A stretch of 64,000 nucleotides of DNA from Pecten maximus (GCF_902652985.1 NC_047017.1:23684001-23748000); one strand, 5' to 3'; shown: positions 17,801 through 45,150, counted from the stretch's first letter. Notes: generated by a model from the letters alone, not told the origin. Made by a program: numbers and translations.

Positions 17801-20800
17801 CAGAACATACACAGCCTTGTTCTCTGTACCCAGGACCAAGCAGCAAATGGCATCCTCATCTGCCATGGACTTCTTCATGGTGCTCAAACAGCTGATGACG
17901 GTCTGAAGGAGTATCATTTTATTGAAACATTACAATCATTGGTTAGCATATGGTTATTTTTCATATCAACTATTATCTGAAGTTTGACACTGCCATCTAC
18001 TAGCTAGATTTTTCTCATACCACAGAGACTGTTTTCAGTCAAAATTTAATATTAAAATTATTTGGAATGCAAAGAATGGTTTGGTTTATGGTTCAATTGG
18101 TTTAACGTCCTGTTAACAGCCAGGGTCACTTAAGGGCGTGCCAGGTTTTTGAGGTGGAGGAAAGCCAGAGTACCTGGAGAAAAACCATCAGCCTACGGTC
18201 AATACCTGGCAAAGAATGGAACAAATATCTGATACACATTTCAACAAATTTTATCTCAATTTAGATGTCATTTAGATTTAGATGTTGTAGCCTCTGTGGA
18301 CTTGCCTGTCTCCTCATTGGCATGTGTTTATACAGATTGGCAAATGCTTCCATGTCACCAATGTCTGTCATCTGGAGGAACCGGAGTGACCGCACCGTCA
18401 ACACTGTACCCTCCGCTCTGTAAAAAGAAATTGTTTATGCTTACAGACCTGGGATGTTAGTTGATACTTCAGTTGAAGTAACAGGAATTCAAAGCAATGC
18501 TACACAAGGAGAAAAAGTAAGGTTTTTATGATGGTTCATGATAGGACGGAATGCTACAGACATGGGTAACACTATATGGCCCCTCCCATATGGCGGGGGC
18601 ATAACAAAGGGAGATAACAGTATATTTTTGAAATAAATAACCAGGAAATTAAATTTATAAATCAAGCATTTTACATATCTTCACTTTGACAGTTTTAAAA
18701 CAACAAACAAGAGTTTGCTCCTCTTGTCATATTTTTTCTGATTATACATATACATGTTTATATGAATGTTTCTTACATAAATTTAAATCATTGCAAAGAG
18801 TTATCATGTCAAATTGTTTGGAAAAAATGAAAGATTTTAACATTACTCTTATATTACTACCAAACAACAGACTTCAATGTTAAATATACTTACCTCATAC
18901 CCTCAAGCATTTCTCTCAAAACAAAAACATTGATTTTTTCCTGAAATCAAAAAAAGAAAATATTTTGTAGCACAGGTTATAAAGTTAGAATTTTATGGAT
19001 ACATGTACAGGATATTACGATAGTTAAATTTACCATTTAGTCTTTGACCCCCACTGTGATCTTCAATGTAAATACATATGTGGTCATAATATATGGACAG
19101 TGGACAATGCGCCATGGTTATTCCTATTATCTATAATATATTGATATTTGACTTTATATTAAGTTAAGTTAATTTAACCACTTCACATTTGACAAGGTTC
19201 TTCATAAAAGTAAAATTTGGTACTCCTTTTATATGAACAGTAAGAAAATTCATACAAAAATATTGAGGAAAAGTATTTTTTTCTTGCTGTTACTAAAGGA
19301 ATAATCTTAGGAGCTTCAGAACGGGCCTTGACCTTGAGAGTACAGATATATCAATTTGTGAACTTTCATGGAAAACCTGGTATTCTATTAGGGAGATATG
19401 GACAATATCAGGAGACAAAATGAAAGGAGAGTATCCATTTAGTATGTGCATTCCCCCTGTTAACATAACCCAACAGGCTTCACTATGTAATGATTGGAAT
19501 TAATGAACATTTTTAGCAATAAAATCTAACCTCCTTGACCTGTGTCCAGAGGTCCAGTTCCACAGTGTTTACATCCAATGTAGGCAATGTGAATTTGAAG
19601 TAAGGCCTCAAATTTTTGTAGATGTAAATATAGGGGCCAGATGCAACAGCTATAGCTGGAAATTAAAGAAAAACAGTATCACACACATATCAGTGTATAT
19701 GTATATCTGATATTATGTCTCAGAATTATGATTTCACTGAATTCACTAAAGCAAAACTATCACATTCACTCTTACCACTGTCAATGTAGATTAAGAACAA
19801 ACTTTGGTAAAGGTGAACCATTTATAATGTAAAAGTGTACAACTTTGTTTGCTGAGGTAGTGGACATCAAATTTTGTTAATGTTTTAGACTAGTTGTACA
19901 CAAATATCCAGAACAGTTTTTCCTCAAATGCAATTCCCATTTGTAGCGTAAGTCAGATAACAAGATAAATCCCTGGAGACAAATTCTAAACAGTAAGTAC
20001 ATCTCATGATCTGTATGGTAGGTGTAATGGATAGACAATTTGCTATCATAGAACTAGCTGTTTTTGACAATCTGCTGTTGTTAGGGTTCAGTATAAGAGA
20101 TGAATACCTGGTGTTACATCAATTGTAACTTAATAACTGTTTATCTTTGATCTAAACACTGATATAAGTACCTGGCATCCTTGGTTCCAGGATATCCATG
20201 TAGAATGTCACAACCCCAGTGGGCAGGTCAATAATGGCATTTTCACTCATCAAGTTTGTTCCTTAAGAATATAAGTGCATATATTTTTTTAACATGTAAC
20301 AGCATAATAGGTTTTAATTTGAAACAATGTGAATGTCTTTCCAACAACAAAACAAGAGTTACATGCATTATTTCCCGAAGTTAATAATATGCACATTATG
20401 CGATACATATTTATAAGATTTCTTTTATCTTGTTTTTAATTTTCACCTTAAGTATTGATAATCACCTTTATAAACTTTGAGTTTCATGTCGTAAGATCCT
20501 GTACCAAGATCAGCAATCACCAGTTTCCAGTCCCCGTCGGCCTGTATGTCTGACAATGCCACACACTGTGTCAGGGTATATAGGGATGCAACAGGGTCGT
20601 GGTATGCATCCAGCCATTTCTCAGCACCCGGTCTGTATAAAAGATCAATGAAATACCTTATAAAACAGGATTTGTACAAAACTGCTGGTGAAATCCATGG
20701 ATTGACTTAAATCAAATTAAAATCCTGTATGTATTTATTGTAGGCTTGCAATTCTGAACATAACATCTTCCCTTCCCCACACATGGAAATTTAAACAAGT

Positions 20801-23063
20801 TGGCGAGCATACATGTAAGTCATTCTTTGACAGATCTAGTACTGTGACCACTCAGAATGTAAGTAACAGGAGACTAAGAAGATTTGTTGGAGCAAAGACC
20901 ATTAATTTTGGTTATTGAGGCAAAGTGAAGACTTTATGGGGGAGATATACATAGAGTAGAAGTTTTCGCTGAGTGTTAGGCATACATATGATAGCTTCTT
21001 TCTATAAATTAAAGGTATACCTGTATTACGATATGATATTATAATTGATGCAAACGGAACATATGCCTCTGTAATCATGTCTAAATTAAGATAATAAAGT
21101 TTATCATTAGTACATGTATTTCATTCCGAAAAGTTAAGCTCACAATAATCCTTCTGGTTAAAATGGCATGAGATTGTTTTAAAATAATATCTTTAAAGTG
21201 TAATATATTGATAAAAAAGTAGGAAGGAAAAAAAACAGTTTTTTCTTTTAACTGACATATCTAAAAGGAATATACACAATTTTCCTCTTTCAGGGAGGTC
21301 CATTGACTCAATATACATATTCATCTGTTTTTAAATTTGCTTTCCTCTTCGCCTCTTTTTGTAATTTCTTTCATATCTGGTGTTCTTGGAAATTTTCTTT
21401 TTAATAAAATCTGAATAGTTGACAGATTAGAATAGGTCAGTTTCCCTCTGTGGCTGTGTTTGTATCTGGTTTCTTTCCCATTCTTATAAATTTTTCGAGC
21501 CATTTTTTTCATCTGTGCTTTGCTAATCAAATATCTTTAACAACTCTTCTAATACTTTGGTGTCCACACCCAATCTCCCATCCTTTTTTCTTCCATCATG
21601 ATCAGATTGTTTTAGAACTCCAAACAGCACATAAGATTGTTTTCTTTTTGTTTCCTTCTCTTAATTGTTTGTGGTTAGATGTCAAAACATTATCTAGTAT
21701 TATGGTATCTTTTACTTCCAACATTTCGCATCTTCATAATTTTATCATTTAAGGTTCATGACCAGACCTCCAGTAAATATCATTTGCTATTGAAATAGTT
21801 TGTACAAACACCAGGGTGTTTGCGAGATTAGCTATGGTTTTACCTGTGTTTCTTTTGAAAATGGAACACTCTTGTATTCACAAATGCCTACCAACTCTTC
21901 CTAATAAACCAAATTATTGGTTCGTTCATTGCGATAATAAGTAGAAACTTCAGAAAAATCTATCTCAAAACAGGTAACAGGTACGAAATTATACTTTTCT
22001 ATGGATAACCATATGGCATTTACAAAGGTACTCCTATGCTTGAAATCTAAAAATACATCTTAGTGTTTGACTTTCAGTGTTGCAAACTCACCTACCCTAT
22101 GTATCAACAGACCAATTCAGAGGGGGTAGGTACACGTGTCAATGATTTCTTGGTATCTATAATCAATACTCAGGTAAAATATTGATAGCAGTACCTTTCA
22201 GACAAATTGATAAACAAGTTGTCTTATTTATATAATGATGCTAGTTCCAGAAATGGCTCTGGATTTTTTTGAAAGGAAATAAATTTTGCCATTGGATTTG
22301 CTAATATTGGGCAATGTATAGGTGAAATACATAGATGGTATGTCCTTGGATTGTAAAAGTGCAAGGTAACCTGGGGTCCATTGCGGGTACAACATATATT
22401 TTCAATGGAATCTTACGTAACAACGTGTTTCAGTTTCGTTAAATACCCAATGCAGTACCTCACCAGCAAAACCTGTTTGGAAGTCGGAAAGGTGTCTGCG
22501 GTCAAGCATGACGGTGTTACAATAGGATTCACTGAGAGTGTTGTCTCAAATAGCCCTGGGCATATACGACCAGGTGTGATTACCGTAGTCGCTTCGTAAG
22601 AAGCCCTGGGTTTACAGGTAAAATAAATCTGAACGGAGATTTTATGTCAGAAGTGTGGACATGTACCTTAATGGATTTATATGGAGGCCTGAACACCACA
22701 TCGTGTTAGAAAATGATTATCACTGTAAATGCAATTTGAAGCCCCCCCCCCCCCCCCCCCCTGTTTTGCCCCACATCTTACTGTATATATAGTGTATAGC
22801 CCACAAGTTGTGCCAGTAAAATGATTCTGTTTATACAATACTATGCTCCTCAAACAATTGCAGTTCAATATCCCTGTGGTAAAATATATACATATTCGTG
22901 CATGTGGGTTCCTTGTACCATTTCAAAACCATTTAAAATTGACAGTTTGAGGGGGTTCCAACCAACATTTATTCTAGTTACTAGTGTACATTTTACCAGT
23001 CTAACCAAATCCATTCCCTTACTTAGTCTTTTCAACGGTTTGATCGGGCTGTTCTTCACTCAT
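11826..23063 (-). CDS. BBS1: Bardet-Biedl syndrome 1 protein (BBSome subunit), 15 coding exons, ~591 aa
   Basis: Exons (minus): 23063-23023, 20632-20466, 20261-20172, 19655-19531, 18940-18894, 18417-18306, 17902-17771, 17089-16983, 16222-16099, 15776-15548, 15058-14900, 14380-14247, 13806-13672, 12368-12282, 11912-11826 (1776 nt, in frame). Peptides [93 protein letters not shown] match BBS1. Confidence 0.97.
12048..12198. repeat. ~76-bp intronic tandem duplication
   Basis: TTAAATGAAAAA..GGCAA...ATTATATGATGGATGACATT.GGAATTAATTTGACAGTAAATATTTGAC twice. Confidence 0.85.
12811..13679. repeat. 55/59-bp minisatellite (~15 copies) containing the BBS1 exon-13 donor site
   Basis: Unit ACTCACTAACATATACTCTCGGTATAACTGTGGTACCTCTATGATATCTTGTTTG(ATTG); minus strand reads CATAGAG|GTACC like the real junction at 13672/13671. 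Confidence 0.95.
17083..17189. repeat. ~54-bp duplication spanning the BBS1 exon-8 acceptor
   Basis: GGTCAATCTACAAGATAAACTT...TGGCTAAAC (17083-) and GGTCAGTCTACAAGATAAACTT...TGGCTAAAC (17137-); minus strand cttgtag|ATTGACC vs cttgtag|ACTGACC. Confidence 0.85.
18080..18208 (-). mobile_element. 5'-truncated SINE (Meta/V-type domain plus tail) in BBS1 intron 6
   Basis: Minus strand GGTTTTTCTCCAGGTACTCTGGCTTTCCTCCACC...GACCCTGGCTGTTAACAGGACGTTAAACC; flanking direct repeat GCAAAGAATGG at ~18069 and ~18209. Confidence 0.75.
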
Positions 23064-23440
23064 CGTGCTAAATGAGCTTGATGTATCGAGTCAGCAGTGT
23101 ATTTTGCGGACAGAGCCTCAGTAGCGAATGTAAACATTCCTTGCGACCGGAAATAGGGATTTTTATTTCAAGCTCCGAAGATACGTTTGACAAAAAAACT
23201 ATACATATTACTTTCAAAAATATAAATTATAGCAGATTGTTTTTGTGAGATATTTTGAAATGTTATAAAAGATGTTTTAATATTAAATTTTTAATTCGTG
23301 AATAAAACTCCGTTGAAATCTGCGGTCCTGCTATTTTCCCGCCAAATTCTAAATTATTTTAGATCGTAAACGACACTACTATTATACCTCAAATTATGAA
23401 AGATGGAAAGTGGTTCCTACAGCTAAATGATATAATTTAA
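23064..23440. promoter_or_regulatory. Bidirectional BBS1/MUS81 promoter region with a probable MUS81 non-coding first exon
   Basis: Head-to-head genes; CpG-containing segment; canonical E2F site TTTTCCCGCCAAA at ~23334-23346, forkhead-type TGTAAACA at ~23129, ETS-type ACCGGAAAT at ~23146; donor TTAA|GTGAGT at 23440/23441 and acceptor gctgtag| at 24196/24197 just upstream of the MUS81 ATG. Confidence 0.6.
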
Positions 23441-24226: not shown

Positions 24227-27200
24227 ATGGAGCTTAATGACCATCCACTCTATGGTAAAAGAAAGAAACGGAGACCAGCCTGTGCAAATCCACTGTTTTT
24301 GCAATGGCTCACAGAATGGAGAGAGGAGGCTGCAGGAAAAGGCTTGAAGACACAATTTGTATATGGCAAGGTATTAAAGAAATATTGACATTAGTGAAAA
24401 TAATGTACATGTCAGCTAGAGTCTAGATAGAGCTACAGTAGTCATGTAATAGGAAGGAGTAAACATACTCTGCCCACACTGGCTCGAATAGCAACCTTTC
24501 ACTCTCAAGGCAAACATCTACACTACTAGCTAAACTAAAGAGAAATTCCTGATAGCCTGAGCTAGTAAGGTGACATTATTACTCTCCACTTTTACAATCC
24601 ATCCACTGAACTAGATGGAATGTCACTTTAATATATAAATCGAACTCGAGAGATTGCAACTAAAATGTAGGGGATCAGAGATTGTTTCTCCTTGGTCAAG
24701 GTCCAGAAGTTTTCTGATGCATTTGATGTAGTTAGCTAGCTCATGATCAGTCCCAATATAGAAACTACCCGGTATTTAAGTCAGTTATAGGCCTAAAAAG
24801 TCTGTCAGCTCTGAAGTTGTTAATCTAAGGGTAATTAATTTTATCAGTAAAATGAAAGTACATGTATTAGGAACATGTGTGGTTGGACATGAATTATTGA
24901 GATTGCTATATATATATAATTTATACAATTAATATTTCAAGGAATTAAACATGAAGATAACTTTCTTTTATTGATTATGCATTTAATATTTACTTATTAA
25001 TTCCAAAAATCAAGTATGAATCATAATTCTGTTGTCTAAAGAAACAACAAAAACAAATCCAAAATAACATTATATGATAGCCATACATCTGACTCGTGAA
25101 AGGCTTGTATCTGCTTATAGTATGCAGTCAATTTTTTCTCTCCAATTTATGAAATAAACTGTGCTATACATGAAAATTTACAACAATTAAAAAATGTTGT
25201 TCTTTTGGTACAGGCCATCAAGTCTTTGAAGAGTTACCCTCTACCTTTGGCTACAGGAAAGGACTGCAAGATGTTGGATAATTTTGGTATGAAATTAAAC
25301 AGATATAGACAAAAATTATTATTACACTTCTAGAACCATTATAAAACCTAATCATACATTTTGCAGTTTAACAGGAATGCTTTTTCATCAAATTTCTGAC
25401 ATTGCAACATAATTTAAGCTCACCCTCTACTTCAAGTCGGAGATTTCCTGTTGGCCCCCTGGGCTTATTGAATGAATAAATACATTTCAGATTTCAGGGT
25501 ATAATATGATGAAATGGATTTAAATTTCTTACATAAGATCAAAAGACTGTCTTGTAATAGTACAGACCTCTCATGATCATGTACCAGTATACCAACCGGT
25601 ATATTTTTGATTCATTACATTTGCTATGTTATTACACAAAGTTATACCCAAGTTACATATTAATGCTATCTACCATTTTATTCTTAATGGAGCAATGGAA
25701 TTTTGATGATGATTAAAATATAAATAACAAAAAAAAAGGATAAAATAGCAATACCTTTATATGATATCAGATCTGAAAATTGAGTGTGAAATAGTGGTTA
25801 TGGCCATAGTTACAATCACCAAAATGGCATCAGCTTATTGAATATGACAAAAAATTAAAGTAAACTTAATTATCATAATTAAAAACAAAAATGGTGTTAC
25901 AATGTGTCCTTTACATTAATGATGTATGGTCTGATCTATGTTATCATTACTTCTGTAAACAGGTGATAAAACTTGCAAGTTGATTGATGAAAAGTTAGCT
26001 GAACATATAGAGCTGAATGGTGAGTATACATTACACAAAAGAGGAAATTTTCATTTCAAACATGTATATGTAAATAATTGTTCTGGTCATACCTTTTGGA
26101 ATATGATGTTATTTCTGTTTTTCATCAAGCAGAGCACTTTCAGGTGGTGACAGTTTCTCTGCATTTAACTAAATGACATTTAAAAACAAAACTTCAATAG
26201 AAGTGTCAGGCACTGGATCGATAACAGACATGAGTGTACTACTGCTGTGGTGTTCTGGGGGTCAGCTGTCAGAAGCTCATCATTGATATACACAATATGA
26301 AAGTGATACATGTTGATCATAGTAAAGGCTTTAAAATAATGTCCTTACCAAGCTGCCATTTTACATGTCGGACATAAACACAAATTCTGTATTCCCTAGG
26401 ATGTGTTGTGCCACCAGAGCCTGTGGATGTCCCAAGAAAGGCTAAATCAAAGAAGACTAACCATACTGTACCGAGTAACTCCACACATCTGGGCAACAAT
26501 TCTAGACCTGTACCAGTTGTTACAGCTACAGGAAGTGTTAATCTGACAAATGTACCTGGAGATGAGGATTTGACCGTTACACCACCTCCAAAGGTACAGT
26601 GTTTCTCTCCCAAATATATAACCAACAGACACCAGAAGTATGCTTTCAAAGGACACAACTAAAACATACAAAGTAGTAGACTGCACCTAGTTCCAAGGTA
26701 GACTCTGCATATAACTCTATCTCTACTATATATATGGCTATAGCAATAGCTGATCTGAGCAGTTATAACTGACTCATTCCAAGACATGAATGTCATTTAT
26801 TCCAACCCCTGCTACAAGATCGATATCACAGTTGCTTTTTCTACATAAAAAAAATTCTTAAAAAGGAGATAGTTTAAAAGAAATAGCTACTTATGCATTT
26901 GACTTGCTATACATTGTTCAAGGTATTCTTGTGGTAATCAAATGCAGAAAAATAAAAATGTAAACTTTTTAAAAATCAAATGCAGAAAAATAGAAATGAA
27001 AACAGGGCGATTATATAGGCCATCTGAAATAATAAGCTTCCACGAAACATTAGTAAATTGAATGTAGAAAGTCAGCTTCATGTTTTCAATTTTAGATTTT
27101 AATTTTCGTTTCATTGTACAGAGAATTGCTCGTCCCCGCAGTAAGAGTGGAGAAGGAGACTACATACCAGCCTACCGGTCAGGAGGTTATGCCATCATGC

Positions 27201-30200
27201 TGGCATTGTACAGGGACACACAGGTAACAACTCCAATGTCCACAAATAGACAAGGTCAGGGTGAGAAAAAATTTTTGAAAGCACTCCTTCCTGAACTAGA
27301 ATCACTCATCCCTCTGAATTCTAATTTTCAATGTAAAAAAACACACAAACCTGTGTAAAGATGTTTTGATCATTAATTTGAACTGCAGTTTTGTGAACAT
27401 TTCATAAAAAAAAACAAGTCAGTATATCGTTCGCTTTGCCATGGCCAAACAGGAACTAACAAGTCGGTTCTAATCATTAAAACTTTTTTCCGGACTTTGT
27501 TTTAAATAAAGTTTAATCATGTATTCGCCTGTGATACTTTTTAATATCAGGTATGAGAATACACTAAAACGAGATTTGAAAGTGTTCAGAAGCGTGACTC
27601 GCTTGTGTTCAATTTAAATATTGTCATTCTGAGTGCCGTCAAAAATTGTCGTAATTGATATGATACCGAGTCCATATTTATTACTCTCATTTACTTGTAT
27701 TAGTCTCGCCCTTCTTGATCACATAAACGCATCAGTATCACGTGGACACTTCTGCAGATCAATCGCAAAGAGAGGGCTCACTGCTCCATGGAACTTACTT
27801 TAAGTATGATTTAATCCTAATTTTTTAATTCTAAAGACAATATCTATAAACATGATTTATTAATCATTTTCTTTTGAAATTTACTCGTCACCAGGGACGA
27901 GTGCACGACGACATTCACGAGTTCTTTCGCACCATGAATGTAGAGCCAAAACAGAGATTAATAGTTTATGAGGCTTTGCTGACTTCTCTACCCAAGGGTA
28001 GAATATCAATATCCAACTGGATATTATCTGGTAAGAACAGAATAAAATAAAGGACATTGTTGCATAAGTATACCTCAGATCTAAAAAAAAAACTAGCAAG
28101 ATCTTTAGGGGAACCAATTGGGGGAAATAGGTTCAAATCTTTATTTCACCTTTTCAGTAATGCAGAATTTCAGTCCAGTTTTGTATAAAGAATCCTTGGC
28201 CCTAGTCAAAACTTATAGACTTAAAACATAGCAGAATCTACCTGTCTATTTGGCCTTTATTTGTCTGATAGAGATCACCATGTTTTGTCACAAAACTATA
28301 GGGTATATTAATAAAATCTATAACTGATTGTGCTATATGAATATAACCCGAAGGAATGGCTTCACGATGGAGTTGGTTACCTGATCCAACACTCAAAGAT
28401 TGTTGTATATAAATATAACAGTGTGTAGCGATATCATTTATAATGTTATCCGTCATTTGGTACATGTTTTCTATTGGTTATTAAAAGGATGAAAAACACC
28501 ATGACAATAAGTCTGGAATTAAGAAACAGAAATTATACAGTAATAGATTTATAATAATCCAACATGCATCAGTAATGACTATTAAATAAGATGGGGATTT
28601 CCATTGTTAAACCTCCTTTAAACCTGATTGGAGTTCAGTTACAACGGAATTTCTGAAAGTTTTGAAGAATCAGCAAAAGGATTAATACCAGGTAGGTACA
28701 TCACAGTCACATTAAACACTTAAATAGTCCGAAATATAAAAACAAATCTAAGCTTTGTAGCACATTAGCTAATTTTCTATTCAATTTATATAGTCTGGAA
28801 AATGTTACAACTTTTATGATTTTATATATTCAAAAACATCAATATTAAATTATCTATGATCTTTGCATGGATAATACTTGAAAATACATAGTCGATGCTT
28901 GCTTCAGGAAAACAACCAGGGAGACTGTACCCCAGGGAAACATACCCGCAGGATGTCCACACACAAAACAATACAGAGCAAGAGAAATAAGGCAATGACG
29001 ACTATTAGAGATGCATCACTGAAGAGGCAACTGAAACTAGAGTTCAAAACTAATGGGTACATTTCACTATACAAATTATGTGCATTTGGAAATAATGATT
29101 CTATTCACTGTTTGAAGCAGTTTTGGTTATACCATATGTACTGAAAATTGGGTCAAACTGATAGATTGTTATTAAAGTGTAGTGTGAATTTGAAATTGGT
29201 AACTTGAATTGTGTATTAACTTTTTTATACAGAGAATTATCTTTGGAGAAAAGGGAGAGTACTCCAAATCAGGACATTGTAAAGGTCACACCTCCTCCGT
29301 CTAAGACTGTACAAGCTCCTGATATTTCCACCACGGATATCTACTTTGATTTGGAGACAACCGGTTTAGGTAAGTGTTAATCGATATTTCACATACAGAC
29401 ATAAAACCATTTTCCTTTCCTGTTTCAGATTTATTTGAGAGTTTGAAGATTATAGCCAAAAGCTAATTGTGACCTATTGCAATGGCCTTTTGTTTGTCTT
29501 TGTGCATTAACTTTTTCTTGTGAAAATGATGAACGGATTTTCAAGAAACTTGGTATATAGCCTTATAATAATAAAATCTCACATGAGTTCAACAATCTGG
29601 CCAAATCAGCTGTAACTTACAGAGCTATGTGCCTTTGTTTATGCAATTGTTTTTACGTTACAGGAAGAACCTCTAGTATTACCCAAATGGCTGCTGTGAG
29701 AGGGAAGGATCAATTCTCCTGTTTTGTTATGCCAAAAAAACGGATCACACGAGAGGCTTCGCAGGTTACAGGGATCAGGGTATTCAGGAAGAAAATGTAC
29801 CGCTATGGAAAGTTTGTAAAAGCAGTATCTATAAGCGACGCCTTTAAACAGTTATATGGATTCTTGAGTAAGACACAAAATAACATTTTGGTTGGACATA
29901 ACATCCAGACTTATGACTGTCCGATACTCATGCATGCTCTATCTTTATGTGACAAGGACATTACAGAACAGTTCATGTCTCATGTCCAGGGATTTGTGGA
30001 TACGAAAAAACTATTCCGGATCATTCATCCATCTCAAAAATCATACACACAAGAGTCACTTGTAGAAAGTCTACTGGGTGAGAAATACAGGGCCCATGAT
30101 GCACTTCAAGATGTTGTGGCTCTTCAAAAGCTTGTCCGGTCTGTTGACATTGACCAGGAGGCTCGACTGAAGGCTTCCTTCTCTGTAGAGGACGTGATGG

Positions 30201-33200
30201 ATTCGTACACATACTCATTACAAGTTAAGGAGAACTTGCCAAGCCTAGAGACAATGGTCAATAAAAAAGTCATTTCGACGAACGTAGCCAAAAGTATCGC
30301 TGGTAGTGGTTTATCTTATAACCACTTACAAACAGAACATAGCAATAAAGGAAGAGAGGGGATTGAAAGTGTGTTCACTGCCACCAAGGGCGGGGACAGA
30401 GTATGTGTGACTAGATCTAGGAAGATCATAGACTCGGTATCAGACTTCCTGTCAGAACATTCAACATAGTCTTTTTATAGTCTCTTAATATGGTAAGGTG
30501 ACACGGTAAAGTGTTTCTTTGTTGTTCATCAGTGTCATCATACAGGAACGCCCGATACTTATTCATAATTGTCAGTTATAGTGATGGTTTGTACAAATTG
30601 GCTGAATAACTTTAGATAAAATTTGGTTCACATGAGCTAAATAATGTCGGTACTAGTTTATGCACTATTTACTGAAATGTTTCACTATATTGTAAGTGCT
30701 AAAAAAAATCAGTCAGTCATAAACGTCAACTAGGTAACTCATATTATTTCATATATTTGTTTACATTTTCATGAAAGGATATGAGAATGGCATACAGAAA
30801 CAGATCAAATTTATAGACTAATACATGATTACGTTGTTTGTAATATTTCATTATCATTAGTGCTTTGTGTACCATTTACATACATGTAAATGTATTCATT
30901 TTTGCATTGATAGACACTTATTTTCAGACACATGTTGTCTATATAATATTGCACCATACAAAATTATGAGGTATCTTTCAATGTAATATCACTATTGTAA
31001 CTGACTTTTCAGTCATTAAGTTAAGTGGAATAGAAGAATTTGTACATGTGAGAGAGGAAATGAGAGAAAATTTTACTTGTGAGAGAGATGTTGTCATTAT
31101 TATGACAGTATAAGATGATGATTTTATTAAATTAAACCTTCAACAAACCTTATCTCTGTTTAAAAGTAGTTGGGTTTTAAGCATGTAGTGCTTGTTTTGT
31201 GAAGTAGAAGAATTTCTATATGTGAGAGAGAAGATGACAAGCTTTTTTGGTTTTAACATTGTGAGATGATGATTACATTAAATTAAACCTTCAATAACAA
31301 AGTATGTATTATGGTAGGTAGGTATTAAACATTTTGTGCTGTACAATACATTACCTGGTACTGTTCAATAAGATGGTGTTATTGACTAAATTTCTTCACA
31401 TATGTACATGTATTTTCATCAACCTGTAAAAATAAAATCTGTTCAGTTTGATTTTGTATCTGTTTTCTGTGTCTAGTTTTAACTGTTTTATCGAGATAGT
31501 GGACTTTTGGTCATTAATGCTATTTTTCTGTTAAAAAAATTTAACTTGAAAAAAATCAATAGCTATGTAATTTGAACAGCCCCAACCTCAAACTTTATGT
31601 AAGCATAAAAACTATGCAAATTAACATGGATTTTGTAGTACTAAGTATTACTTTATCTACAGGTATAGTATCGCAATGCTGGATAGTAGCTGGTACACAA
31701 ACTGGGTGTGGTAGAAACAGAGCGCCAAAGTACCTGATTTTTTTGATTTTTTTTCATGAGACCAAACAAACAAGTTAATGGAAGAAAGGGTTTTAAAGGA
31801 TGTGGAGTTTGTCCAACTGATTCCTTGGAGATATATGTAGAAAGTGGTATGAATATAAATTTCTGATCAACAGGATCGCAAAAAGCTGCCTAACCCTTAG
31901 TCTGCAACATCACAGCCTTTACTGGCTTTTGGCCAAAGATATGTTGCTGTTAATGTGCAGTAAAACAAAAGTTAACCTGTCACTATAGTAACAAAGCCAT
32001 TTTAATTACAGGACCCTGGTAGTAGAGGTTACCTTTCAAGGGCAGATCTCATCAGGAAGGCTCAACCTCTGGCTGATAAATCATTTACAGTTGTGAGTTG
32101 AAATGTTTGGTAACCAACAAGGCTAGTCATATGGATAAACAATTCTCCATGGTGGAGGGGAGAGCAAAAAGATGCATCTGTGTAGACTCTTAGTCAAATT
32201 TAAAATTCCTTATACATGGTATGTGTACATTATTGAATTGCAATCGGTAGCAAGCCAATCATTCTCTAAGACAGGGGTAACCCTTCAGTTATATAAAAGT
32301 GTGTTGTATAAGCTACCCAGGGTAAGCATTAATTACGACAGAAAAATTTTACCAAATTTATAGATAACACAATTTATTCTTTTTAAAAAAACGTAAATTT
32401 AGCACAAAAGAAGTACAATAGGTTATTTGAGAATGTTTTTGTATATTTGTTTAAATGCACATTATTGTTACCCAGCAATATGTCTGTTCCCTTTGTAGCC
32501 AGATGCAGGTTGCCGTTACACATCCTGGTCCTCCATGGGCACTCTCATCAAAAAGGCCCTTGTCATCAAGGAGAGCAATCCAGCCAAGTACGAATTACAC
32601 TTATATTTGTCTTGTAAGGATTCAGTGAAGTCTGAAAAGTTTGATAGAACTTATAAAAATGGGAATAGTCACTTATAAATTTGTAAAATTTACTATCTAA
32701 TCTCCTCTGACCTTAAATATTGGTCAAGGTCATTTCTTTTCGCAAACTTTGTCAGGAGTCATCCCAGTAACCTACCAGGCAAATATCTTGATTGTAGGTG
32801 TTTAAGTTAATCAGAAGCCATTTTACATGTTTACCAGTTTATAACACCACTACCAGTGTATATGCTGCCTCTATGATAATTTATCAAGAGGGCAGATCTT
32901 AATAAATGACAATATTTTTCTAAAAAAAAAAACCCTTGTATTCTTAAGTTGTAATATGTATAACTTTGTAAACCCACCCCATCCTACCCCCCACATCAAA
33001 ATTTATTTCAACATAAAACCTCTGTAAATATCACAGATTTTTTCATGGTATCACTTTGTCTACAGGTATAGTATCACAGATGCTGGATGTGAGCTGGCAC
33101 ACAAACTGGAGATGGTAGGAGCAGACGGTCATGTGTCCATTACAGGAGGCCAGACACAAGCCAGTGATCCAAGAGATGTGTTTTCATTGGGCAGTCCCAG

Positions 33201-36200
33201 TAGGCTAACTGACCACCACACCACCAGGGATACTGGTGTCAAGTAAGTTAAAAAACGACTCTTCAGTCCTACATAAAAGTGAATCACATTGTATATGATG
33301 AAATACATGCATTGCCCAAGATTCAATGTAACATAATCAAATCCCAATTATTTATTTCCAACTCATAGCCGATTCTTTACAGTTTATCTAATCTGTTTGT
33401 ATCATATGCGATGCCCATGTTACAACATATATGAAGTAGTAAAAACTATAATTCTCTGTAATTTCATTGGTAAACTGATCCTCACAATATTCTTTGTAAA
33501 ATTGTTTTCATCAGATCTAGCTTTGAGTTTGTGTACGTTGATGAAACTAACAAGCCAGTTATGACAAAAGATAAAGCACAAGTTCTTGTGGATGGTATGT
33601 ATCATATTTTTCGGTCAATTTGATTGAATTTTCAGATCGTATGTTTGAAATAGCAGGCAAGTAGGATATTCTAGAATATTTTTTAAACTGAAGATGCTGG
33701 AGACTTACGTGCTGTATTGTAATAAGATAATTATTGCATAGCCTTTATTGATATTAAGTAAGAACAGTCAAATGATGATAATTCAATAATGATTTTAGAC
33801 ACATTGTCAAAAAGACAATCTTGTCAAGATTCAGACATGAGTGTGAAATCTTGATATTGTGACAGTGTACTCACATCACCCCACAAATTATGTAAAGCAA
33901 ACGTCATGTCTTTCTCTCACTATACAGTTAACCTGATAAATCTGTGTATATAATTTCTGAAATCCAAACAAGAGACCCAGAGGGCCTACGTCGCTCATCA
34001 AAAAAAAACACTTCAGTAATCATGGCAAAACACTAATGAAAATGTAGACTCTTCGATGTGGTCTGTCTGAATATACTGCGCGGCTGTGCATGTAACATCT
34101 TCCTATCTGCCTTTCCACAGGCATTTGACATAAAAAAAATTGGTTATTTTCTAATTCTTTTCCTAAAGGAATAAGATAATATGTAATATTATACTTGAAT
34201 GAGATTTCAATTTTTGCACAGCTTCAAAGTTTTAAGGGTGTGTGACCCTACAAAAACACTACAGTTATACATTCATAAAGGCACTCTTTATATCTTGTAT
34301 CTATCATTATACAACATACACATTCTGAAATGTTTGTTTCACAAGTTCAATGTGTAAAATTACTACTTATTAAAACAAATACATTATTTTAAGTGTAGTA
34401 CCCAAATTCCAACACTGGTGTAAAGTATATTTTATGCTGCAATATCCCAGGACCTATGTGTTCCTTGTTAAACACATATACCTACTAACACAACCTGGAG
34501 ATGGAAATGATCATGATGTTACATTTTGGTTACAGATGACTTCGGGATTGGGTTTTTAGTGCACTGTGACTACCATGGATTACTGACCAGTGGGAAGTTA
34601 TATAAACTGGACATGTCCAGGTTGGTACACACATATGTAAGACAGCTACTGTCATACAATATACAAAAATATCCTGTGGAGAGAGAAATGATATGTAGCA
34701 AAGTCAAAATTATGTTTTATTGTCAGCTTTATTAAAATGGACTAATGTTTAGTTTTAGAGCTAGCTAGCCTTCAATTTTATCATGCAACTGAGCAGATTT
34801 GACAGAAATTAAATAATGATCAAATCATAAGGGATATTGTATCTAGTGTATTCTATTTTAGACCTATGAGTGACCTAGTGTATTCTATTGTAGACCTATG
34901 GGTGACCCAGTGTATTCTTTTGTAGACATATGGGTGACCTAGTGTATTCTGTTATAGACCTATGGGTGACCTAGTGTATTCAGGGCCCGGGAAAAGCACT
35001 CGTCCGCTCATCCTGACGAGTAGATTTCCCCGACGGACGAGTGGTTTTAATTGTCAACTAGTCCGTCGGACGAGTAGAATTTCTCTATGTTATTTCAGTA
35101 TTCGTTAATAAAATTGCTTAAAATTTGATGCATTGTTAGTTATGTATTCTTTTTTGTGCTATTATTACGAAAAATAGTAATATTACTGCATGATAGCAGG
35201 TAAGTAGGACTATCTACGTCTGTAAATCTGAAGTCATGTACGATGACCGATAACCTCCGAGTGTTCCGGGTGACATGTTATAGTATAATGGGTGTTGTCC
35301 GAGGATGTCTGCATAAAAATGGCTCAACGGAAATTGGATGGTTATTTTTATTGTCAGTCAACCTGAAAAACAGGATGGCAGTTGTGTTGACACGACTGAT
35401 TTCTGAAAAATAACTGATTAAGTCACAGCTATATTTTATACTGGTTCATTGAAAACTTTCTCACAATTTCTCGCGTAATGTGACCTATTTTCCGATGTTT
35501 ACATTTGCTACATTCCTGTATTAGTTGAATCATCTTTCTATCAATGGATTAAAACTTTACTAACGTAATGAACATTATAAGATCAAGCGTAAACGTATTG
35601 AATACAATTGCTAAACAGCCATGTGAAAAATGAGAATGTTGTATAGCAGATAATTCTGAAATTTTCTGGACAAGTGAATTCTTTGTTTGGACGAGTACTT
35701 TTATTCAGGCAACTCGTCCGATGGACAAGTGCTTTTGAAAGTTTTTCCTGGGCCCTGGTATTCTATTGTAGACTTATGGGTGACCTAGTGTCTTCTATTG
35801 TAGACCTGTGGGTGACCTAGTGTATTCTATTGTAGACCTATGGGTGACCTTGTGTATTCTATTGTAGACCTATGGGTGACCTTGTGTATTCTATTGTAGA
35901 CCTATGGGTGACCTAGTGTATTCTATTGTAGACCTATGGGTGACCTAATGTATTATATTGTGGACCTATGAGTGACCTAGTGTATTATATTGTAGACCTA
36001 CAGGTGACCTAGTGTATTCTATTGTAGACCTATGTGTGACCTAGTGTATTCTATTGTAGACCTATGGGTGACCCAGTATATTCTATTATAGACCTACGAG
36101 TGACCTAGTGTATTCTATTTTAGACCTATGGGTGACCTAGTGTATTATATTGTGGACCTATGGGTGACCTAATGTCTTCTATTGTAGACCTACAGGTGAC

Positions 36201-39200
36201 CTAGTGTATTCTATTGTAGACCTATGGGTGACCTAGTGTATTCTATTGTAGACCTACAGGTGACCTAGTGTATTCCATTGTAGACCTATTGGTGACCTGG
36301 TGTATTCTATTGTAGACCTACAGGTGACCTAGTGTATTCTATTGTGGACCTATGGGTGACCTAGTGTATTCTATTGTAGACCTACAGGTGACCTAGTGTA
36401 TTCTATTGTGGACCTATGGGTGACCTAATGTATTCTATTGTAGACCTGTGGGTGACCTATTGCATTCTATTGTAGTGACCTAGTGTATTCTATTGTGGAC
36501 CTATGGGTGACCTAGTGTATTCTATTGTAGACCTGTGGGTGACCTAGTGTATTCTATTGTGGACCTACAGGTGACCTAGTGTATTCTATTGTAGACCTAT
36601 GGGTGACCTAGTGTATTCTATTGTAGACCTATGTGTGACCTGTTGTATTCTATTGTAGTGACCTAGTGTATTCTATTGTAGACCTATGGGTGACCTAGTG
36701 TATTCTATTGTAGACCTATGGGTGACCTATTGTATTCTATTGTAGTGACCTAGTGTATTCTATTGTAGACCTATGGGTGACCTAGTGTATTCTATTTTAG
36801 ACCTATGGGTGACAAAGTGTATGCCCATCTTCATGACAATGATGCCCCTGACAGAGCGGTTGAACTTGCTGCCCCGCCCAGATTGCCTGCCCTTCAGTTA
36901 TCTGATGATGAAGACGGTGACGATGACATCTGTATGGTATCTCTGGGAAATCCTCGGTTAACCTCATTTGATAATGAACCTATGACCAGACCAGCTGAAC
37001 CAAACGTTGTCCGTCCTACAGTTATGGCAGGTATGGCTACACTGCTGATGTGTTGTTTGACACAAATGAAAAATAGTAGCTACAACATAGATGTATCGGT
37101 AACCCCCAAGTTTAGATGTATCGGTAACCCCAAGGTTAAATATGTTGTGCAAATTTTTCAGTCCAATAAATTTCAGATTTCAATTGATGCTTTGAAATAC
37201 ACAGATAGCTCATTCTTTGGAATTACAGATTCACTGTAGCTGTTGGCATTGTTTCACAGAAATAAACAATTATTAAACATTCTTTCTTGGAGGTCTTTTT
37301 AAACTGCTGTAATTTATTCCTTGGTGAATAACACACATCTTGTATTTGGTTACTTCACACACAGAATTTATCTTACTCTTAGAATGAATTGATGAATTGC
37401 TACACAATATATCTGCTGTACAGCTTATCTCTATCCAACATGCTTTACCTGAACATATCCAAGCCTTATAAAATGTTTTAAGATTCCACCACTGGAAAGA
37501 AAACAAAGTCCAGGGCCAGAAGCAAACCTACCAAGCCGACATCTGTAAAACTATCTGCCGCGGCCTCCCATCCACATCTACCAATTGCAAGCCTCATCGA
37601 TAAACTGCCCACCTGTCCAGAGTCCAGTACAATGACAACATTACCCAGTTCCCAGGAGTCACAAGAGTCCCTAGGGTCCATTCGTAGTATAAGCTCATTG
37701 TCATCTGTGTCCAGCTTACCCCAGCCTGATTTTATCCTCACACCAGGAAACTTTGACATCATACTCTGCATAGACAACCAGGAGTTCTATGGAGGAGGGT
37801 AAAGAATAGCTGGTTAACCTTATAAAAAACCCTTGTCAAATATCTTTAATCTTTAAAATTAAAAATAAAAGCTTGCAAATAATTGAACTCTTCAAAAACA
37901 ACACATATGATTCTTGCAATGAAATGTATCTGAAAATCAACCATATTTGGGGGGGAAAAAAACTATTTATAATACCGGTATTTTATGTTTTAAACAATAT
38001 TGAGTAAAGCTTGAATTATGGTAAAGTTTTATGATATGTGTAAGTATATATTTTTTTTTTTTTTTATTTTTTTTTTTTGACATTCAGGAAAAATGGCAGT
38101 AAGACGTTGCTCCCAGACCTGATGAAGAATGGAGTGAATTGTGACTTGCGGAAACTTCAAGTAGGTGATCTTCTGTGGGTCGCAAGGGAGAAAACAGCTG
38201 GGGTTACAGGTAGGTATCTGATGTACCGGTACTGTGGAATATGTAATAATCATTATTATTTACTGGTTATCTGTAACTTGGATATTCTACATTATGGATA
38301 TGTTTGGGCAATGTGATATGGATAAACGTGCAATCTTCTCAATGAGGAACTCAAATGTTTTAAGGAATGAAACCTTTGGATCCGTGCTCAGTTTGCCAAA
38401 TGAAATACACAAAGAGAAAATAACTTGAGATGTATGGTATAGCTTTAAGGTAATTACTGGACCCTATGGATATTGATAGACATTTGTGTGAATAAAATGC
38501 ATCATTTCTATGACAATCTTTTCAAACTATGAAAATATCCATACTAGTGCATACACATGTATAAAGTCTGAAAGAATAGCTCTATCTTATTAAAGGGAAG
38601 GGGAGAGAACTTGTGTTGGACTACGTGGTGGAGAGGAAGAGGATGGACGACCTGGTTCACAGCTGTATAGATGGTAGACTGCCAGATCAAAAGGTGCTAC
38701 TTTCTTTTGAACAACAGATGTCAGATACAACTTTCTGACTACCAGCTCTTTATATTTTTGTTTTCAAACTGAATTTTAAACAGACAAATGTTCAAGAACT
38801 GTTAAGAGATAATAAAGATATATTTGCCTTTAGATATATTCCAGATAAAACACTTTTAAAAAGAGTAAATTTTTCACAAGACATGTTTTGGCTCTCGTAT
38901 ACTGTAAAAAAAACCATTGTAATTTACGCACCTTGAATATCACGATAACAATCAAAAATCAAACAATCCAAAAAAAATAATGAGCAAAATCTCAAGAATT
39001 TGTATCCAAAATACTGTATACCTGGTAATTTTCGCCCCCGTTTAATTTTCGCCATTTTCGCCCTTTGAAGATAGGGTGAATTTAAGATGAAGGCGAAAAT
39101 TTCAAGCTGAATTGGAGGATTTATAAACCATAGTACATGGGCCAAGTGTAGTCAGATCACAAACATACCCTCATACTTTTCAACTGTAAAATCACGTACT

Positions 39201-44784: not shown

Positions 44785-45150
44785 TATTAGCCCACAATAA
44801 TCGGAGAGAGGGTTATTCAAATCGCCTTTGCATCCGTCTGTCTATAAGCAATCCTTGTTATTGCTATTTGTTGAAAAGTACAGGAGGGATATTCCTAAAA
44901 CTTAATGCATAGGTTCCCCTTGGTCTCTAGTTATGCCATTTCAATTTTGATTTTGGATAGAGAGAAAAAATGGTTGACAGGCGGCCATCTTGGATTTTGA
45001 GAATTGAAGTTTGTTATCGCTATTTCTTGAAAAATGCAGGAGGAATATTTCTCAAACTTCATGAGTAGGTTCCCCTCCTTCATTAGTTGTGCAAATTCAA
45101 TTGAAGTTTTTGATCAAAAAAGAAATGGCAGACAAAGCGGCCAACTTGGA
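44785..45150 (+). mobile_element. Old, diverged relative of the 155-bp-repeat HINE family (host of the younger insertion)
   Basis: ATTAGCCCAC...GGGTTATTCAAATCGCC 5' end and two diverged units (GGCGGCCATCTTGGATTTTGA, TTGTTATCGCTATTTCT, GTAGGTTCCCC); similarity appears to resume briefly after 46837. Confidence 0.7.

What the first reader, a model, noticed from the sequence alone, without database searches (positions are those of the whole stretch)
27122..31436. Intact PML/Plex9-like DEDDh exonuclease inside MUS81, same strand and splice-phase compatible: possible endonuclease/exonuclease switch locus
Seen: the intron after MUS81 coding exon 5 (27224-32011) holds a 3-exon ORF with all DEDDh catalytic residues (DLE..YD..HDALQD) and its own AATAAA (31431). 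MUS81 exon 5 ends in phase 0 (ACACAG|gt, 27223). The first exonuclease exon starts in phase 0 (cttcag|GAA, 28908) and is open from its first base. Splicing 27223->28908 would give a ~553-aa protein: the MUS81 N-terminal 190 aa joined to a 3'-5' exonuclease in place of the ERCC4 nuclease. Established: the MUS81 N-terminal HhH region binds SLX4; TREX1 and PML-like DEDDh enzymes degrade DNA and are linked to retroelement restriction. Inference: this is either a same-strand nested gene with its own promoter (CpG-bearing 27420-27800, possible UTR exon ending at 28691) or an alternative terminal-exon isoform that recruits an exonuclease to the SLX4 scaffold. Either way, intronic polyadenylation here could truncate MUS81.
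Basis: partly seen in the sequence, partly recalled or inferred. Interest (0 to 1): 0.88.

Follow-up and report, generated by a model that had tools for sequence, protein, structure and literature searches.

The report
Transposon-derived exonuclease gene inside MUS81
A scallop MUS81 intron holds an intact, conserved gene for a PML/Plex9-like DNA-degrading enzyme that came from a Kolobok-type transposon and is already annotated as a separate gene, and nothing here shows that it fuses with MUS81.

Summary
A 3-exon, 348-aa ORF with an intact DEDDh active site and a PML_C (SAM-like) domain lies on the same strand inside the intron that splits the MUS81 winged-helix domain. RefSeq already annotates it as a separate gene, LOC117323633 of Pecten maximus.

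An ortholog sits in the same MUS81 intron in Argopecten irradians. Between the two species dN/dS is 0.11 and dS is 0.84. A non-coding 5' exon ending at 28691 and the AATAAA site are conserved, while the surrounding intron no longer aligns.

The new point is its origin. The protein belongs to the accessory exonuclease of KolobokD DNA transposons (transposase + exonuclease + PML_C). P. maximus carries young ~9.5-kb copies with TTAA target duplications. A transposon gene on another chromosome has the same three intron positions and phases. So the feature "first exon open from its first base, phase 0" is inherited from an internal transposon exon. Its match to MUS81 exon 5 is a 1-in-3 coincidence.

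No such isoform is annotated, and it would cut the winged helix. One loose end remains: the 45 nt before the ATG evolve like coding sequence.

The parts
27122..27223 (+). MUS81 coding exon 5. It encodes the start of the winged-helix domain and ends in phase 0 (ACACAG|gt).
   Evidence: Translation. Aligns to human MUS81 winged helix 2MC3, residues 4-27. 84.7% identical to Argopecten, with changes mostly at third codon positions.
27257..27924 (.). Copy of a dispersed repeat of about 670 bp.
   Evidence: At least 50 matches at 70-84% identity across the genome. No counterpart in the Argopecten intron.
28637..28691 (+). Conserved non-coding 5' exon of the exonuclease gene ('exon U'), with donor CAG|gtaggt. 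Its 5' end (the transcription start) is not defined; weaker conservation starts near 28572.
   Evidence: 84.5% identical to Argopecten inside otherwise unalignable intron. It has a 2-nt indel, an in-frame TAA at 28683-28685 and no codon periodicity (differences 2/2/3).
28908..29056 (+). Exonuclease exon 1. The acceptor cttcag|GAA is in phase 0 and the annotated ATG is at 28953. The 45 nt before the ATG (28908-28952) are open and encode the family motif TPGKHT.
   Evidence: Same acceptor position and phase as the transposon gene in L016. Pre-ATG differences by codon position are 2/2/10, p = 0.004.
29233..29369 (+). Exonuclease exon 2. It encodes a disordered linker and the Exo I motif FDLETTGL, and ends in phase 1.
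   Evidence: Same intron phase and position as L016.
29664..30469 (+). Exonuclease exon 3. It encodes the rest of the DEDDh domain (D165, H225, D230), a connector helix and the PML_C / SAM-like domain. The stop codon is at 30467-30469.
   Evidence: Pfam. PDB matches. Model and Foldseek search. For this exon pS is 0.53 and pN is 0.074.
30470..31477 (+). 3' UTR with the AATAAA signal at 31431-31436 and a conserved U/GU-rich downstream element at 31447-31477.
   Evidence: The AATAAA and the downstream block are conserved in Argopecten, while the rest of the UTR does not align. The stretch is unique in the genome.
32012..32095 (+). MUS81 coding exon 6. It continues the winged helix and is the normal splice partner of exon 5.
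   Evidence: Translation. Conserved in Argopecten with third-position changes.
32499..32609 (+). MUS81 exon 7, the core of the winged helix.
   Evidence: Pfam PF21136 MUS81-like_WH, profile positions 45-75 of 86, E 6.5e-9.
38604..38705 (+). MUS81 exon carrying the ERCC4 nuclease motif ([10 protein letters not shown]). It shows that the host gene continues intact downstream.
   Evidence: PF02732 hit of 27.9 bits, above the cut-off. Amino-acid identity to Argopecten is 0.97.

Best explanation
This is a separate protein-coding gene (RefSeq LOC117323633 of Pecten maximus) nested on the same strand in the MUS81 intron that interrupts the winged-helix domain.

Origin. It descends from the exonuclease module of a KolobokD DNA transposon, whose single gene encodes a transposase followed by an exonuclease and a PML_C domain. 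The copy lost its transposase. The host has kept it under purifying selection since before Pecten and Argopecten diverged.

Inferred expression. Transcription starts just upstream of, or within, the conserved block at about 28.57-28.64 kb. The non-coding exon ending at 28691 is spliced to 28908, followed by two more exons. Cleavage follows the conserved AATAAA at 31431. Translation starts at ATG 28953.

Inferred product. The 348-aa protein has a basic N-terminal helix, a disordered linker, a catalytically complete DEDDh 3'-5' exonuclease domain of the Plex9.1 type, and a SAM-like nucleic-acid-binding domain. By homology it trims DNA, and possibly RNA, from 3' ends in a metal-dependent way.

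Shown here: the anatomy, the conserved position, the selective constraint, the fold and the transposon kinship.
Inferred only: the transcription start, the enzyme activity, the substrates, and any cross-talk with MUS81.

Some MUS81 pre-mRNA may splice into exon 1 as a by-product, but this reading does not need that.
For: - The joined model equals the annotated 348-aa protein.
- The Argopecten ortholog P0002 lies inside an 827-residue same-strand gene. That gene's exons align with the MUS81 exons of the window, with BBS1 upstream in both.
- Over 346 codons dN/dS is 0.112, dS is 0.84 and there are no indels. This is comparable to the MUS81 exons.
- Only the exons, exon U and the poly(A) block align between the species.
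- Exon U is conserved but evolves as non-coding sequence.
- Pfam finds RNase_T and PML_C.
- PDB matches: 9l8b at E 4e-27 and Plex9.1 (9mrc) at E 8e-23.
- The AlphaFold model has pLDDT 86. Foldseek gives 9mrc at TM 0.92 and then the Exuperantia EXO+SAM structure.
- Transposon kinship: relatives carry a Mutator-like/Kolobok transposase N-terminal of the exonuclease.
- P. maximus has copies of about 9.46 kb that are 99.3-99.7% identical. They have TTAA duplications and 5'-GG...CC-3' termini, as defined for Kolobok.
- KolobokD is described as encoding a DEDDh exonuclease in molluscs.
- The transposon gene in L016 has the same three intron positions and phases.
- In the tree the nested clade sits among transposase-linked sequences.
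Against: - No RNA evidence could be obtained, so the transcription start and the independence of the transcript rest on conservation and on two genome annotations.
- The P. maximus start codon is not conserved. Argopecten has CTG there.
- The 45 nt upstream of the ATG evolve like coding sequence (2/2/10 differences by codon position, p = 0.004). They keep the family motif (S/T)PGxHT.
- Exon U cannot supply an ORF in P. maximus because of its in-frame TAA. So some translated form starting further upstream existed at least ancestrally.
- No transposase remnant, TIR or TTAA could be found around the nested copy.
- The direction of descent (transposon to host) is inferred from tree position and exon anatomy, not from a rooted test.
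Confidence: 0.7

Rival explanations
1. Functional MUS81-exonuclease chimera. MUS81 exon 5 is alternatively spliced to 28908 and the transcript ends at the intronic poly(A) site. The product carries the SLX4-binding N-terminus of MUS81 joined to the exonuclease in place of ERCC4. This would be a host-transposon exon capture of the kind described for transposase capture in vertebrates (bioRxiv 10.1101/2020.05.07.082677, listed).
For: - The two exons are phase-compatible (0/0) and the frame is open in both scallops.
- The 15 codons before the ATG show coding-type substitution (2/2/10, p = 0.004). They retain the family motif.
- Exon U carries a stop in P. maximus and evolves as non-coding sequence, so no conserved upstream start other than the MUS81 exons is visible.
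- A same-strand acceptor followed by a poly(A) site inside an intron acts mechanically like a gene trap.
Against: - A phase match has a 1-in-3 chance. The open frame is inherited from the transposon gene.
- No fusion protein of 191-609 aa was found in the 5.8-billion-protein collection.
- Two annotations call the exonuclease as a separate gene.
- The conserved exon U with its donor is unexplained by this model.
- The junction would truncate the winged helix after about 25 of 86-109 residues.
- The pre-ATG signal covers only 45 nt. An ancestral start in exon U that P. maximus later lost would also explain it.
Confidence: 0.12
2. Reverse direction of descent. This is an old cellular exonuclease gene, and KolobokD transposons acquired their exonuclease from such a gene.
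For: The tree is unrooted, and the nested clade (P0001-P0005) is well supported as a unit (99/96). Solo exonuclease+PML_C proteins also exist in a hemichordate (P0025).
Against: - Exon 1 begins with sequence homologous to the transposase-exonuclease linker. It starts at an acceptor that needs an upstream coding exon.
- The start codon is not conserved.
- The sister sequence P0005 lies next to Mutator and FLYWCH fragments.
- The fusion architecture is spread over bivalves, gastropods and a brachiopod. The nested gene was found only in two scallops.
Confidence: 0.08
3. Decaying transposon fragment with no host function.
For: The family has many broken copies in this genome; several matches carry stop codons. 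No expression data were obtained.
Against: - At the orthologous position in two genera dN/dS is 0.11 with dS of 0.84. There are no indels or stops over 346 codons.
- All catalytic residues are intact.
- The 5' exon and the poly(A) site are conserved.
Confidence: 0.03

Closest known systems
Zebrafish Plex9.1 (PDB 9MRC/9MRD) and related fish 'exodeoxyribonuclease III' entries 9L8B/9L85
   Same: Best sequence and structure match of the exonuclease domain: E 4e-27 to 8e-23, 33% identity, TM 0.92, rmsd 1.5 A. The DEDDh residues are complete. Plex9 proteins are active exonucleases that restrict LINE elements (PMC10123124).
   Different: The crystallised Plex9.1 is the EXO domain only. The scallop protein also has a PML_C/SAM-like domain and a basic N-terminal extension. 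The two are not syntenic and not orthologs. The scallop gene belongs to a transposon-borne family.
PML-I C-terminal domain (CDE / PXL) and Drosophila Exuperantia
   Same: Two-part EXO + SAM-like architecture. PML_C is matched at E 5e-18. Foldseek aligns 318 columns to Exu EXO+SAM, 5L80. PXL and Exu are described as EXO-SAM modules (PMC13659232).
   Different: Human PXL and Exu have lost the DEDD residues and are pseudo-nucleases. The scallop protein keeps all of them. It has no RBCC/TRIM part.
KolobokD DNA transposons (Kojima and Bao 2022, PMC9587614)
   Same: The exonuclease family is the one fused downstream of the transposase in mollusc elements. Those elements have TTAA target duplications and 5'-RR...YY-3' termini. 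The nested gene shares the exon-intron structure of such a gene.
   Different: The nested copy has no transposase and no recognisable termini. It is single-copy, stays at one place in two genera and is under host-level constraint.
TREX1/TREX2
   Same: DEDDh fold and a likely 3'-5' DNA exonuclease chemistry.
   Different: Only a distant match (E about 0.005, TM 0.65). TREX1 has no SAM-like domain, and dimerises through its EXO domain.
Host-transposase fusion genes born by splicing into an intronic transposon (transposase capture)
   Same: A transposon-derived exon with a ready acceptor lies in a host intron, on the same strand and in a compatible phase.
   Different: No fusion transcript or protein is shown here. 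The captured part would be an accessory nuclease rather than a DNA-binding transposase domain.

Membership tests
DEDDh (DnaQ-like) 3'-5' exonucleases | Exo I D-x-E, Exo II D, Exo III H-x4-D | tested here: met
   D74 and E76, D165, H225 and D230 are present. They align to the same residues of 9l8b and 9l85. H159, N160, D165, H225 and D230 are invariant in 24 relatives.
DEDDh (DnaQ-like) 3'-5' exonucleases | RNase H-like exonuclease fold | tested here: met
   The model has pLDDT above 94 over residues 70-348. Foldseek probability is 1.00 to Plex9.1, Exu and TREX1.
DEDDh (DnaQ-like) 3'-5' exonucleases | Metal-dependent 3'-5' nuclease activity | not testable with these tools
   Needs recombinant protein and D74A/E76A controls.
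PML-CDE / Plex9-like exonucleases | Closer to Plex9/PML-CDE than to TREX1/2 | tested here: met
   E 4e-27 to 8e-23 for the Plex9-type entries against 5e-3 for TREX1. TM 0.92 against 0.65.
PML-CDE / Plex9-like exonucleases | C-terminal PML_C (SAM-like) sub-domain after the EXO domain | tested here: met
   PF25244 at residues 271-345, 65.5 bits against a cut-off of 27.1. The helical bundle is modelled with high confidence.
PML-CDE / Plex9-like exonucleases | Descent from the jawed-vertebrate pml locus (synteny or orthology) | tested here: not met
   This is a mollusc gene inside MUS81, and its nearest relatives are mollusc transposon proteins. It resembles the family and works like it, but it is not an ortholog.
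KolobokD transposon | Exonuclease encoded downstream of a DDD/E transposase in one gene | tested here: not met
   For the nested copy, tblastn of the transposase part against 27224-28907 finds nothing. The feature is met for paralogs L016 and L017 and for 60 or more database proteins.
KolobokD transposon | TTAA target duplication and 5'-RR...YY-3' termini | tested here: inconclusive
   Met for the 9.46-kb copies on C7 and C10 (definition). Around the nested gene no termini can be recognised, and the flanks do not align between the species.
KolobokD transposon | Common descent of the exonuclease module (shared introns, tree position) | tested here: met
   Three intron positions and phases are identical with L016. 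The alignment extends into the linker motif SPGxHT. The tree places it among transposase-linked sequences.
Independent same-strand nested gene | Own first exon or promoter and own poly(A) site | tested here: inconclusive
   The non-coding exon with its donor and the AATAAA block are conserved. The gene is annotated separately in two genomes. No 5'-end or junction reads were available.
Host-transposon fusion isoform (MUS81-exonuclease) | In-frame splice compatibility | tested here: met
   Phase 0 to phase 0, and the frame is open in both species.
Host-transposon fusion isoform (MUS81-exonuclease) | Existence of the junction in RNA or protein | not testable with these tools
No fusion protein was found among database proteins of 191-609 aa.

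The most novel reading that the evidence does not exclude
The three transposon-derived exons serve, at least in part, as alternative terminal exons of MUS81. The product would be an SLX4-docking 3'-5' exonuclease in place of the ERCC4 endonuclease. It would be a host-transposon exon capture of an accessory nuclease, maintained by selection. That would explain why the 45 nt upstream of the ATG still evolve as coding sequence although exon U cannot provide a start in P. maximus.
Probability: 0.12. Interest if true: 0.75.

Novelty: new member of a known kind. Interest (0 to 1): 0.36.

Why it matters
The locus is a clean case of a transposon accessory enzyme kept by its host. A catalytically intact EXO+SAM exonuclease of the PML/Plex9 type has been retained at one place for the whole Pecten-Argopecten divergence.

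It also shows that the 'PML C-terminal' two-domain module is the standard cargo of KolobokD transposons in molluscs. This raises the testable idea that vertebrate PML exon 9 and the Plex9 genes have a transposon origin too. That idea is not addressed in the PML/Plex9 papers I read or in the KolobokD paper.

For MUS81 biology the gain is modest. A same-strand acceptor plus poly(A) site inside a repair gene is a plausible source of truncated or chimeric transcripts, but nothing here shows that they exist.

Tried and rejected

2. The joined spliced model was not built or searched. Exons were searched by reference. The identical database protein P0001, returned, was used for whole-protein work.

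3. The look-up of encoding contigs has no record for P0001. The contig of P0005 gave gene calls but no DNA.

4. A third species for the pre-ATG test. The Logan contigs of P0003 and P0004 (L020-L022) hold only exon 3; exons 1 and 2 are not within reach.

5. Transposase relics in 27224-28907: none, even at E up to 50.

6. Exon 1 alone against transposon proteins by BLASTP: no hit. The homology shows only as an extension of the full-length alignment and in the multiple alignment.

7. Is exon U a relic of the last transposase exon? A shared in-frame Q-K-N (CAAAAGAAT) is suggestive, but the local alignment is not significant (p about 0.1). I do not claim it.

8. It is a dispersed repeat and is not conserved.

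9. Earlier scan notes held nothing on this place, on MUS81 or on this family.

10. An open frame over 15 codons is not in itself evidence of coding. It is expected about half the time by chance ((61/64)^15, roughly 0.49; my own arithmetic).


Full report
WHAT IS THERE

The window is Pecten maximus chromosome piece C3:23684001-23748000 (the species name comes from the protein hit). MUS81 runs on the + strand from about 24.2 kb to about 41.9 kb.
- Exon 1 encodes the ...[15 protein letters not shown]... N-terminus with a weak helix-hairpin-helix hit.
- Exon 5 (27122-27223) aligns to residues 4-27 of the human MUS81 winged helix, 2MC3.
- Exon 7 hits Pfam MUS81-like_WH, positions 45-75 of 86.
- The ERCC4 motif lies at 38604-38705.

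The 4.8-kb intron after exon 5 therefore splits the winged helix near its start.

Inside that intron, on the same strand, are three exons: 28908-29056, 29233-29369 and 29664-30469. They have canonical splice sites and phases 2/1 and 1/2. P0001 is named 'uncharacterized protein LOC117323633 [Pecten maximus]'.

WHAT THE PROTEIN IS

- Pfam finds RNase_T (residues 72-236) and PML_C (residues 271-345, 65.5 bits).
- Against solved structures the best hits are four fish entries (9l8b, 9l85, 9mrd, 9mrc) at E 4e-27 to 8e-23. TREX1 reaches only about 5e-3.
- 9MRC is zebrafish Plex9.1 (PMC13659232).
- An AlphaFold model built on 24 relatives has mean pLDDT 86, and above 94 from residue 70 onward.
- Foldseek ranks Plex9.1 first (TM 0.92, rmsd 1.5 A). 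Next comes Drosophila Exuperantia EXO+SAM, aligned over 318 columns.
- D74, E76, D165, H225 and D230 are all present.

So this is a catalytically complete EXO+SAM-like protein. Human PML-I PXL and Exu share this architecture but have lost the active site. Nuclease activity and substrates are inferred, not shown.

IS IT A LIVE GENE?

The closest database relative, P0002 of Argopecten irradians, shares 84-87% identity. It lies inside an 827-residue same-strand gene, with BBS1 upstream on the other strand.

BLASTN between the window and that locus (L013) aligns the following, in the same order in both species:
- the MUS81 exons;
- a 69-nt block at 28637-28705;
- the three exonuclease exons;
- a 67-nt block at 31411-31477.

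The rest of the introns and most of the 3' UTR no longer align.

Summed exon by exon over 346 codons, dN is 0.094, dS is 0.84 and dN/dS is 0.11, with no indels. This is similar to the MUS81 exons. Because these are orthologous copies that diverged in place, the constraint is host-level selection. The 'dead fragment' reading is out.

- Its donor CAG|gtaggt is conserved.
- It carries a 2-nt indel between the species and an in-frame TAA in P. maximus.
- Its differences show no codon periodicity (2/2/3).

It is therefore a conserved non-coding 5' exon.

The 31411-31477 block holds the AATAAA and a nearly invariant U-rich downstream element.

That repeat has at least 50 copies and is absent from the Argopecten intron.

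WHERE IT COMES FROM

The genome has at least 29 matches to exon 3. The best paralog is only 43% identical.

Relatives in oysters, mussels, scallops, abalone and a brachiopod carry a Mutator-like (PF20700) transposase N-terminal of exonuclease + PML_C. These often fall in clusters of 50-165 members.

In P. maximus, copies on C7, C10 and C1 are 99.3-99.7% identical over about 9.46 kb. They are flanked by TTAA on both sides in different genomic contexts. They begin 5'-GG and end CC-3'. That is the published definition of Kolobok elements. The KolobokD lineage is described as encoding a DEDDh exonuclease in molluscs (PMC9587614).

A second, multi-exon copy on C2 (L016) shows a transposase exon ending ...LSM|gt, followed by three exons. 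Their boundaries match the nested gene in position and phase:
- cag|VHRKIGLSPGTHT..., phase 0, with seven residues before (S/T)PG, as in |[13 protein letters not shown];
- ...ESTGL G|gt, phase 1;
- cag|..ARTSH....

The alignment of the nested proteins to transposon proteins extends through this linker.

In a maximum-likelihood tree the Pecten+Argopecten pair groups with P0003, P0004 and P0005. P0005 lies next to Mutator and FLYWCH fragments. This group sits in a polytomy of transposase-linked clades.

No transposase relic is detectable in the intron.

My reading is that a KolobokD copy inserted into the MUS81 intron before the two scallop genera split. It then lost its transposase, and its exonuclease module became a host gene.

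WHAT THIS DOES TO THE CHIMERA IDEA

That feature is inherited. Exon 1 was an internal coding exon of the transposon gene. The match with the phase-0 end of MUS81 exon 5 is then a 1-in-3 coincidence.

Further points against a selected fusion:
- Exon U is conserved, which the fusion model does not explain.
- Two annotations keep the genes apart.
- A search with P0001, which admits proteins of 191-609 aa, found no fusion protein.
- The junction would leave only the first helix of the winged-helix domain.

One point in its favour deserves record. The P. maximus ATG is derived; Argopecten and the family have Leu or Ile there. The 45 nt before it differ from Argopecten at 2/2/10 first/second/third codon positions (p = 0.004). 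They also keep the family motif. If that segment had been neutral along the whole Pecten branch, about 10 first- and second-position changes would be expected; 4 are seen (p about 0.02).

So a form translated from further upstream existed until recently or still exists. The Argopecten annotation takes its start from exon U. In P. maximus exon U has a stop. The two explanations are start-codon turnover in a disordered N-terminal tail, or translation entering from MUS81 exon 5. I favour turnover and give the functional chimera about 12%.

LIMITS

- The transcription start is not mapped.
- The direction transposon-to-host is inferred without a rooted test.
- Mizuhopecten proteins are in the database (P0099), but no ortholog of the nested gene was returned from it. 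This may reflect annotation rather than absence.

VERDICT

The locus holds an already annotated, selectively maintained, KolobokD-derived PML/Plex9-like exonuclease gene nested in MUS81. The 'endonuclease/exonuclease switch' remains an untested minority reading.

Noticed in passing
L017 (G000:C7:42752000-42761999) with L014; also L018/L015 (C10) and L019 (C1): A young KolobokD element of about 9.46 kb. Copies are 99.3-99.7% identical. They have a TTAA target duplication, termini 5'-GGACGTTG...CCCCC-3' and an imperfect TIR of about 16 bp. The element carries multi-exon transposase pieces and an intron-less 390-aa linker+exonuclease ORF. It is likely to be recently active.
   Followed up: partly
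L002, L003, L004 (G000:C2:4.05 Mb, C13:28.2 Mb, C2:53.0 Mb); L016: A second near-identical set of transposase+exonuclease+PML_C genes, with tree branch lengths of 0-0.012. Its exonuclease module has the same three-exon structure as the nested gene.
   Followed up: partly
family level (P0014, P0047-P0100; PDB 9MRC; Pfam PF25244): The Pfam 'PML C-terminal' domain together with a Plex9-like EXO domain is the standard accessory module of KolobokD transposons in molluscs and a brachiopod. The papers I read on PML/Plex9 and on KolobokD do not connect the two. Vertebrate PML exon 9 and Plex9 may themselves be transposon-derived. I did not test this.
   Followed up: no
window 33505-33604 and 34525-34617 (+): Two short blocks between the MUS81 winged-helix and nuclease exons are conserved with Argopecten in a coding-like way: amino-acid identity 0.75 and 0.97, with changes mostly at third positions. 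They have no Pfam match. They are probably extra MUS81 exons of the long (827-residue) scallop protein, encoding an unrecognised domain.
   Followed up: partly
window 27257-27924: A dispersed repeat of about 670 bp with at least 50 copies at 70-84% identity on many chromosomes. It was not classified.
   Followed up: partly
window about 44800-46750 (+ frames): A tandem-looking array that repeats an open frame with the peptide ...KVLKGSFSNFICRFPLVPSYAYCVLRPIGKQ... at least seven times. It has weak similarity to a stretch of the Argopecten locus. It was not examined.
   Followed up: no
window 20162-23187 (- strand): Conserved blocks upstream of MUS81 correspond to the BBS1 gene annotated on the opposite strand in Argopecten. 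MUS81 and BBS1 are head-to-head neighbours in both scallops.
   Followed up: no
window about 31020-31300: The exonuclease 3' UTR contains two adjacent similar segments of about 150 nt (...gaagaattt.tacatgtgagagag...attaaattaaaccttcaa...). I saw this by eye only.
   Followed up: no
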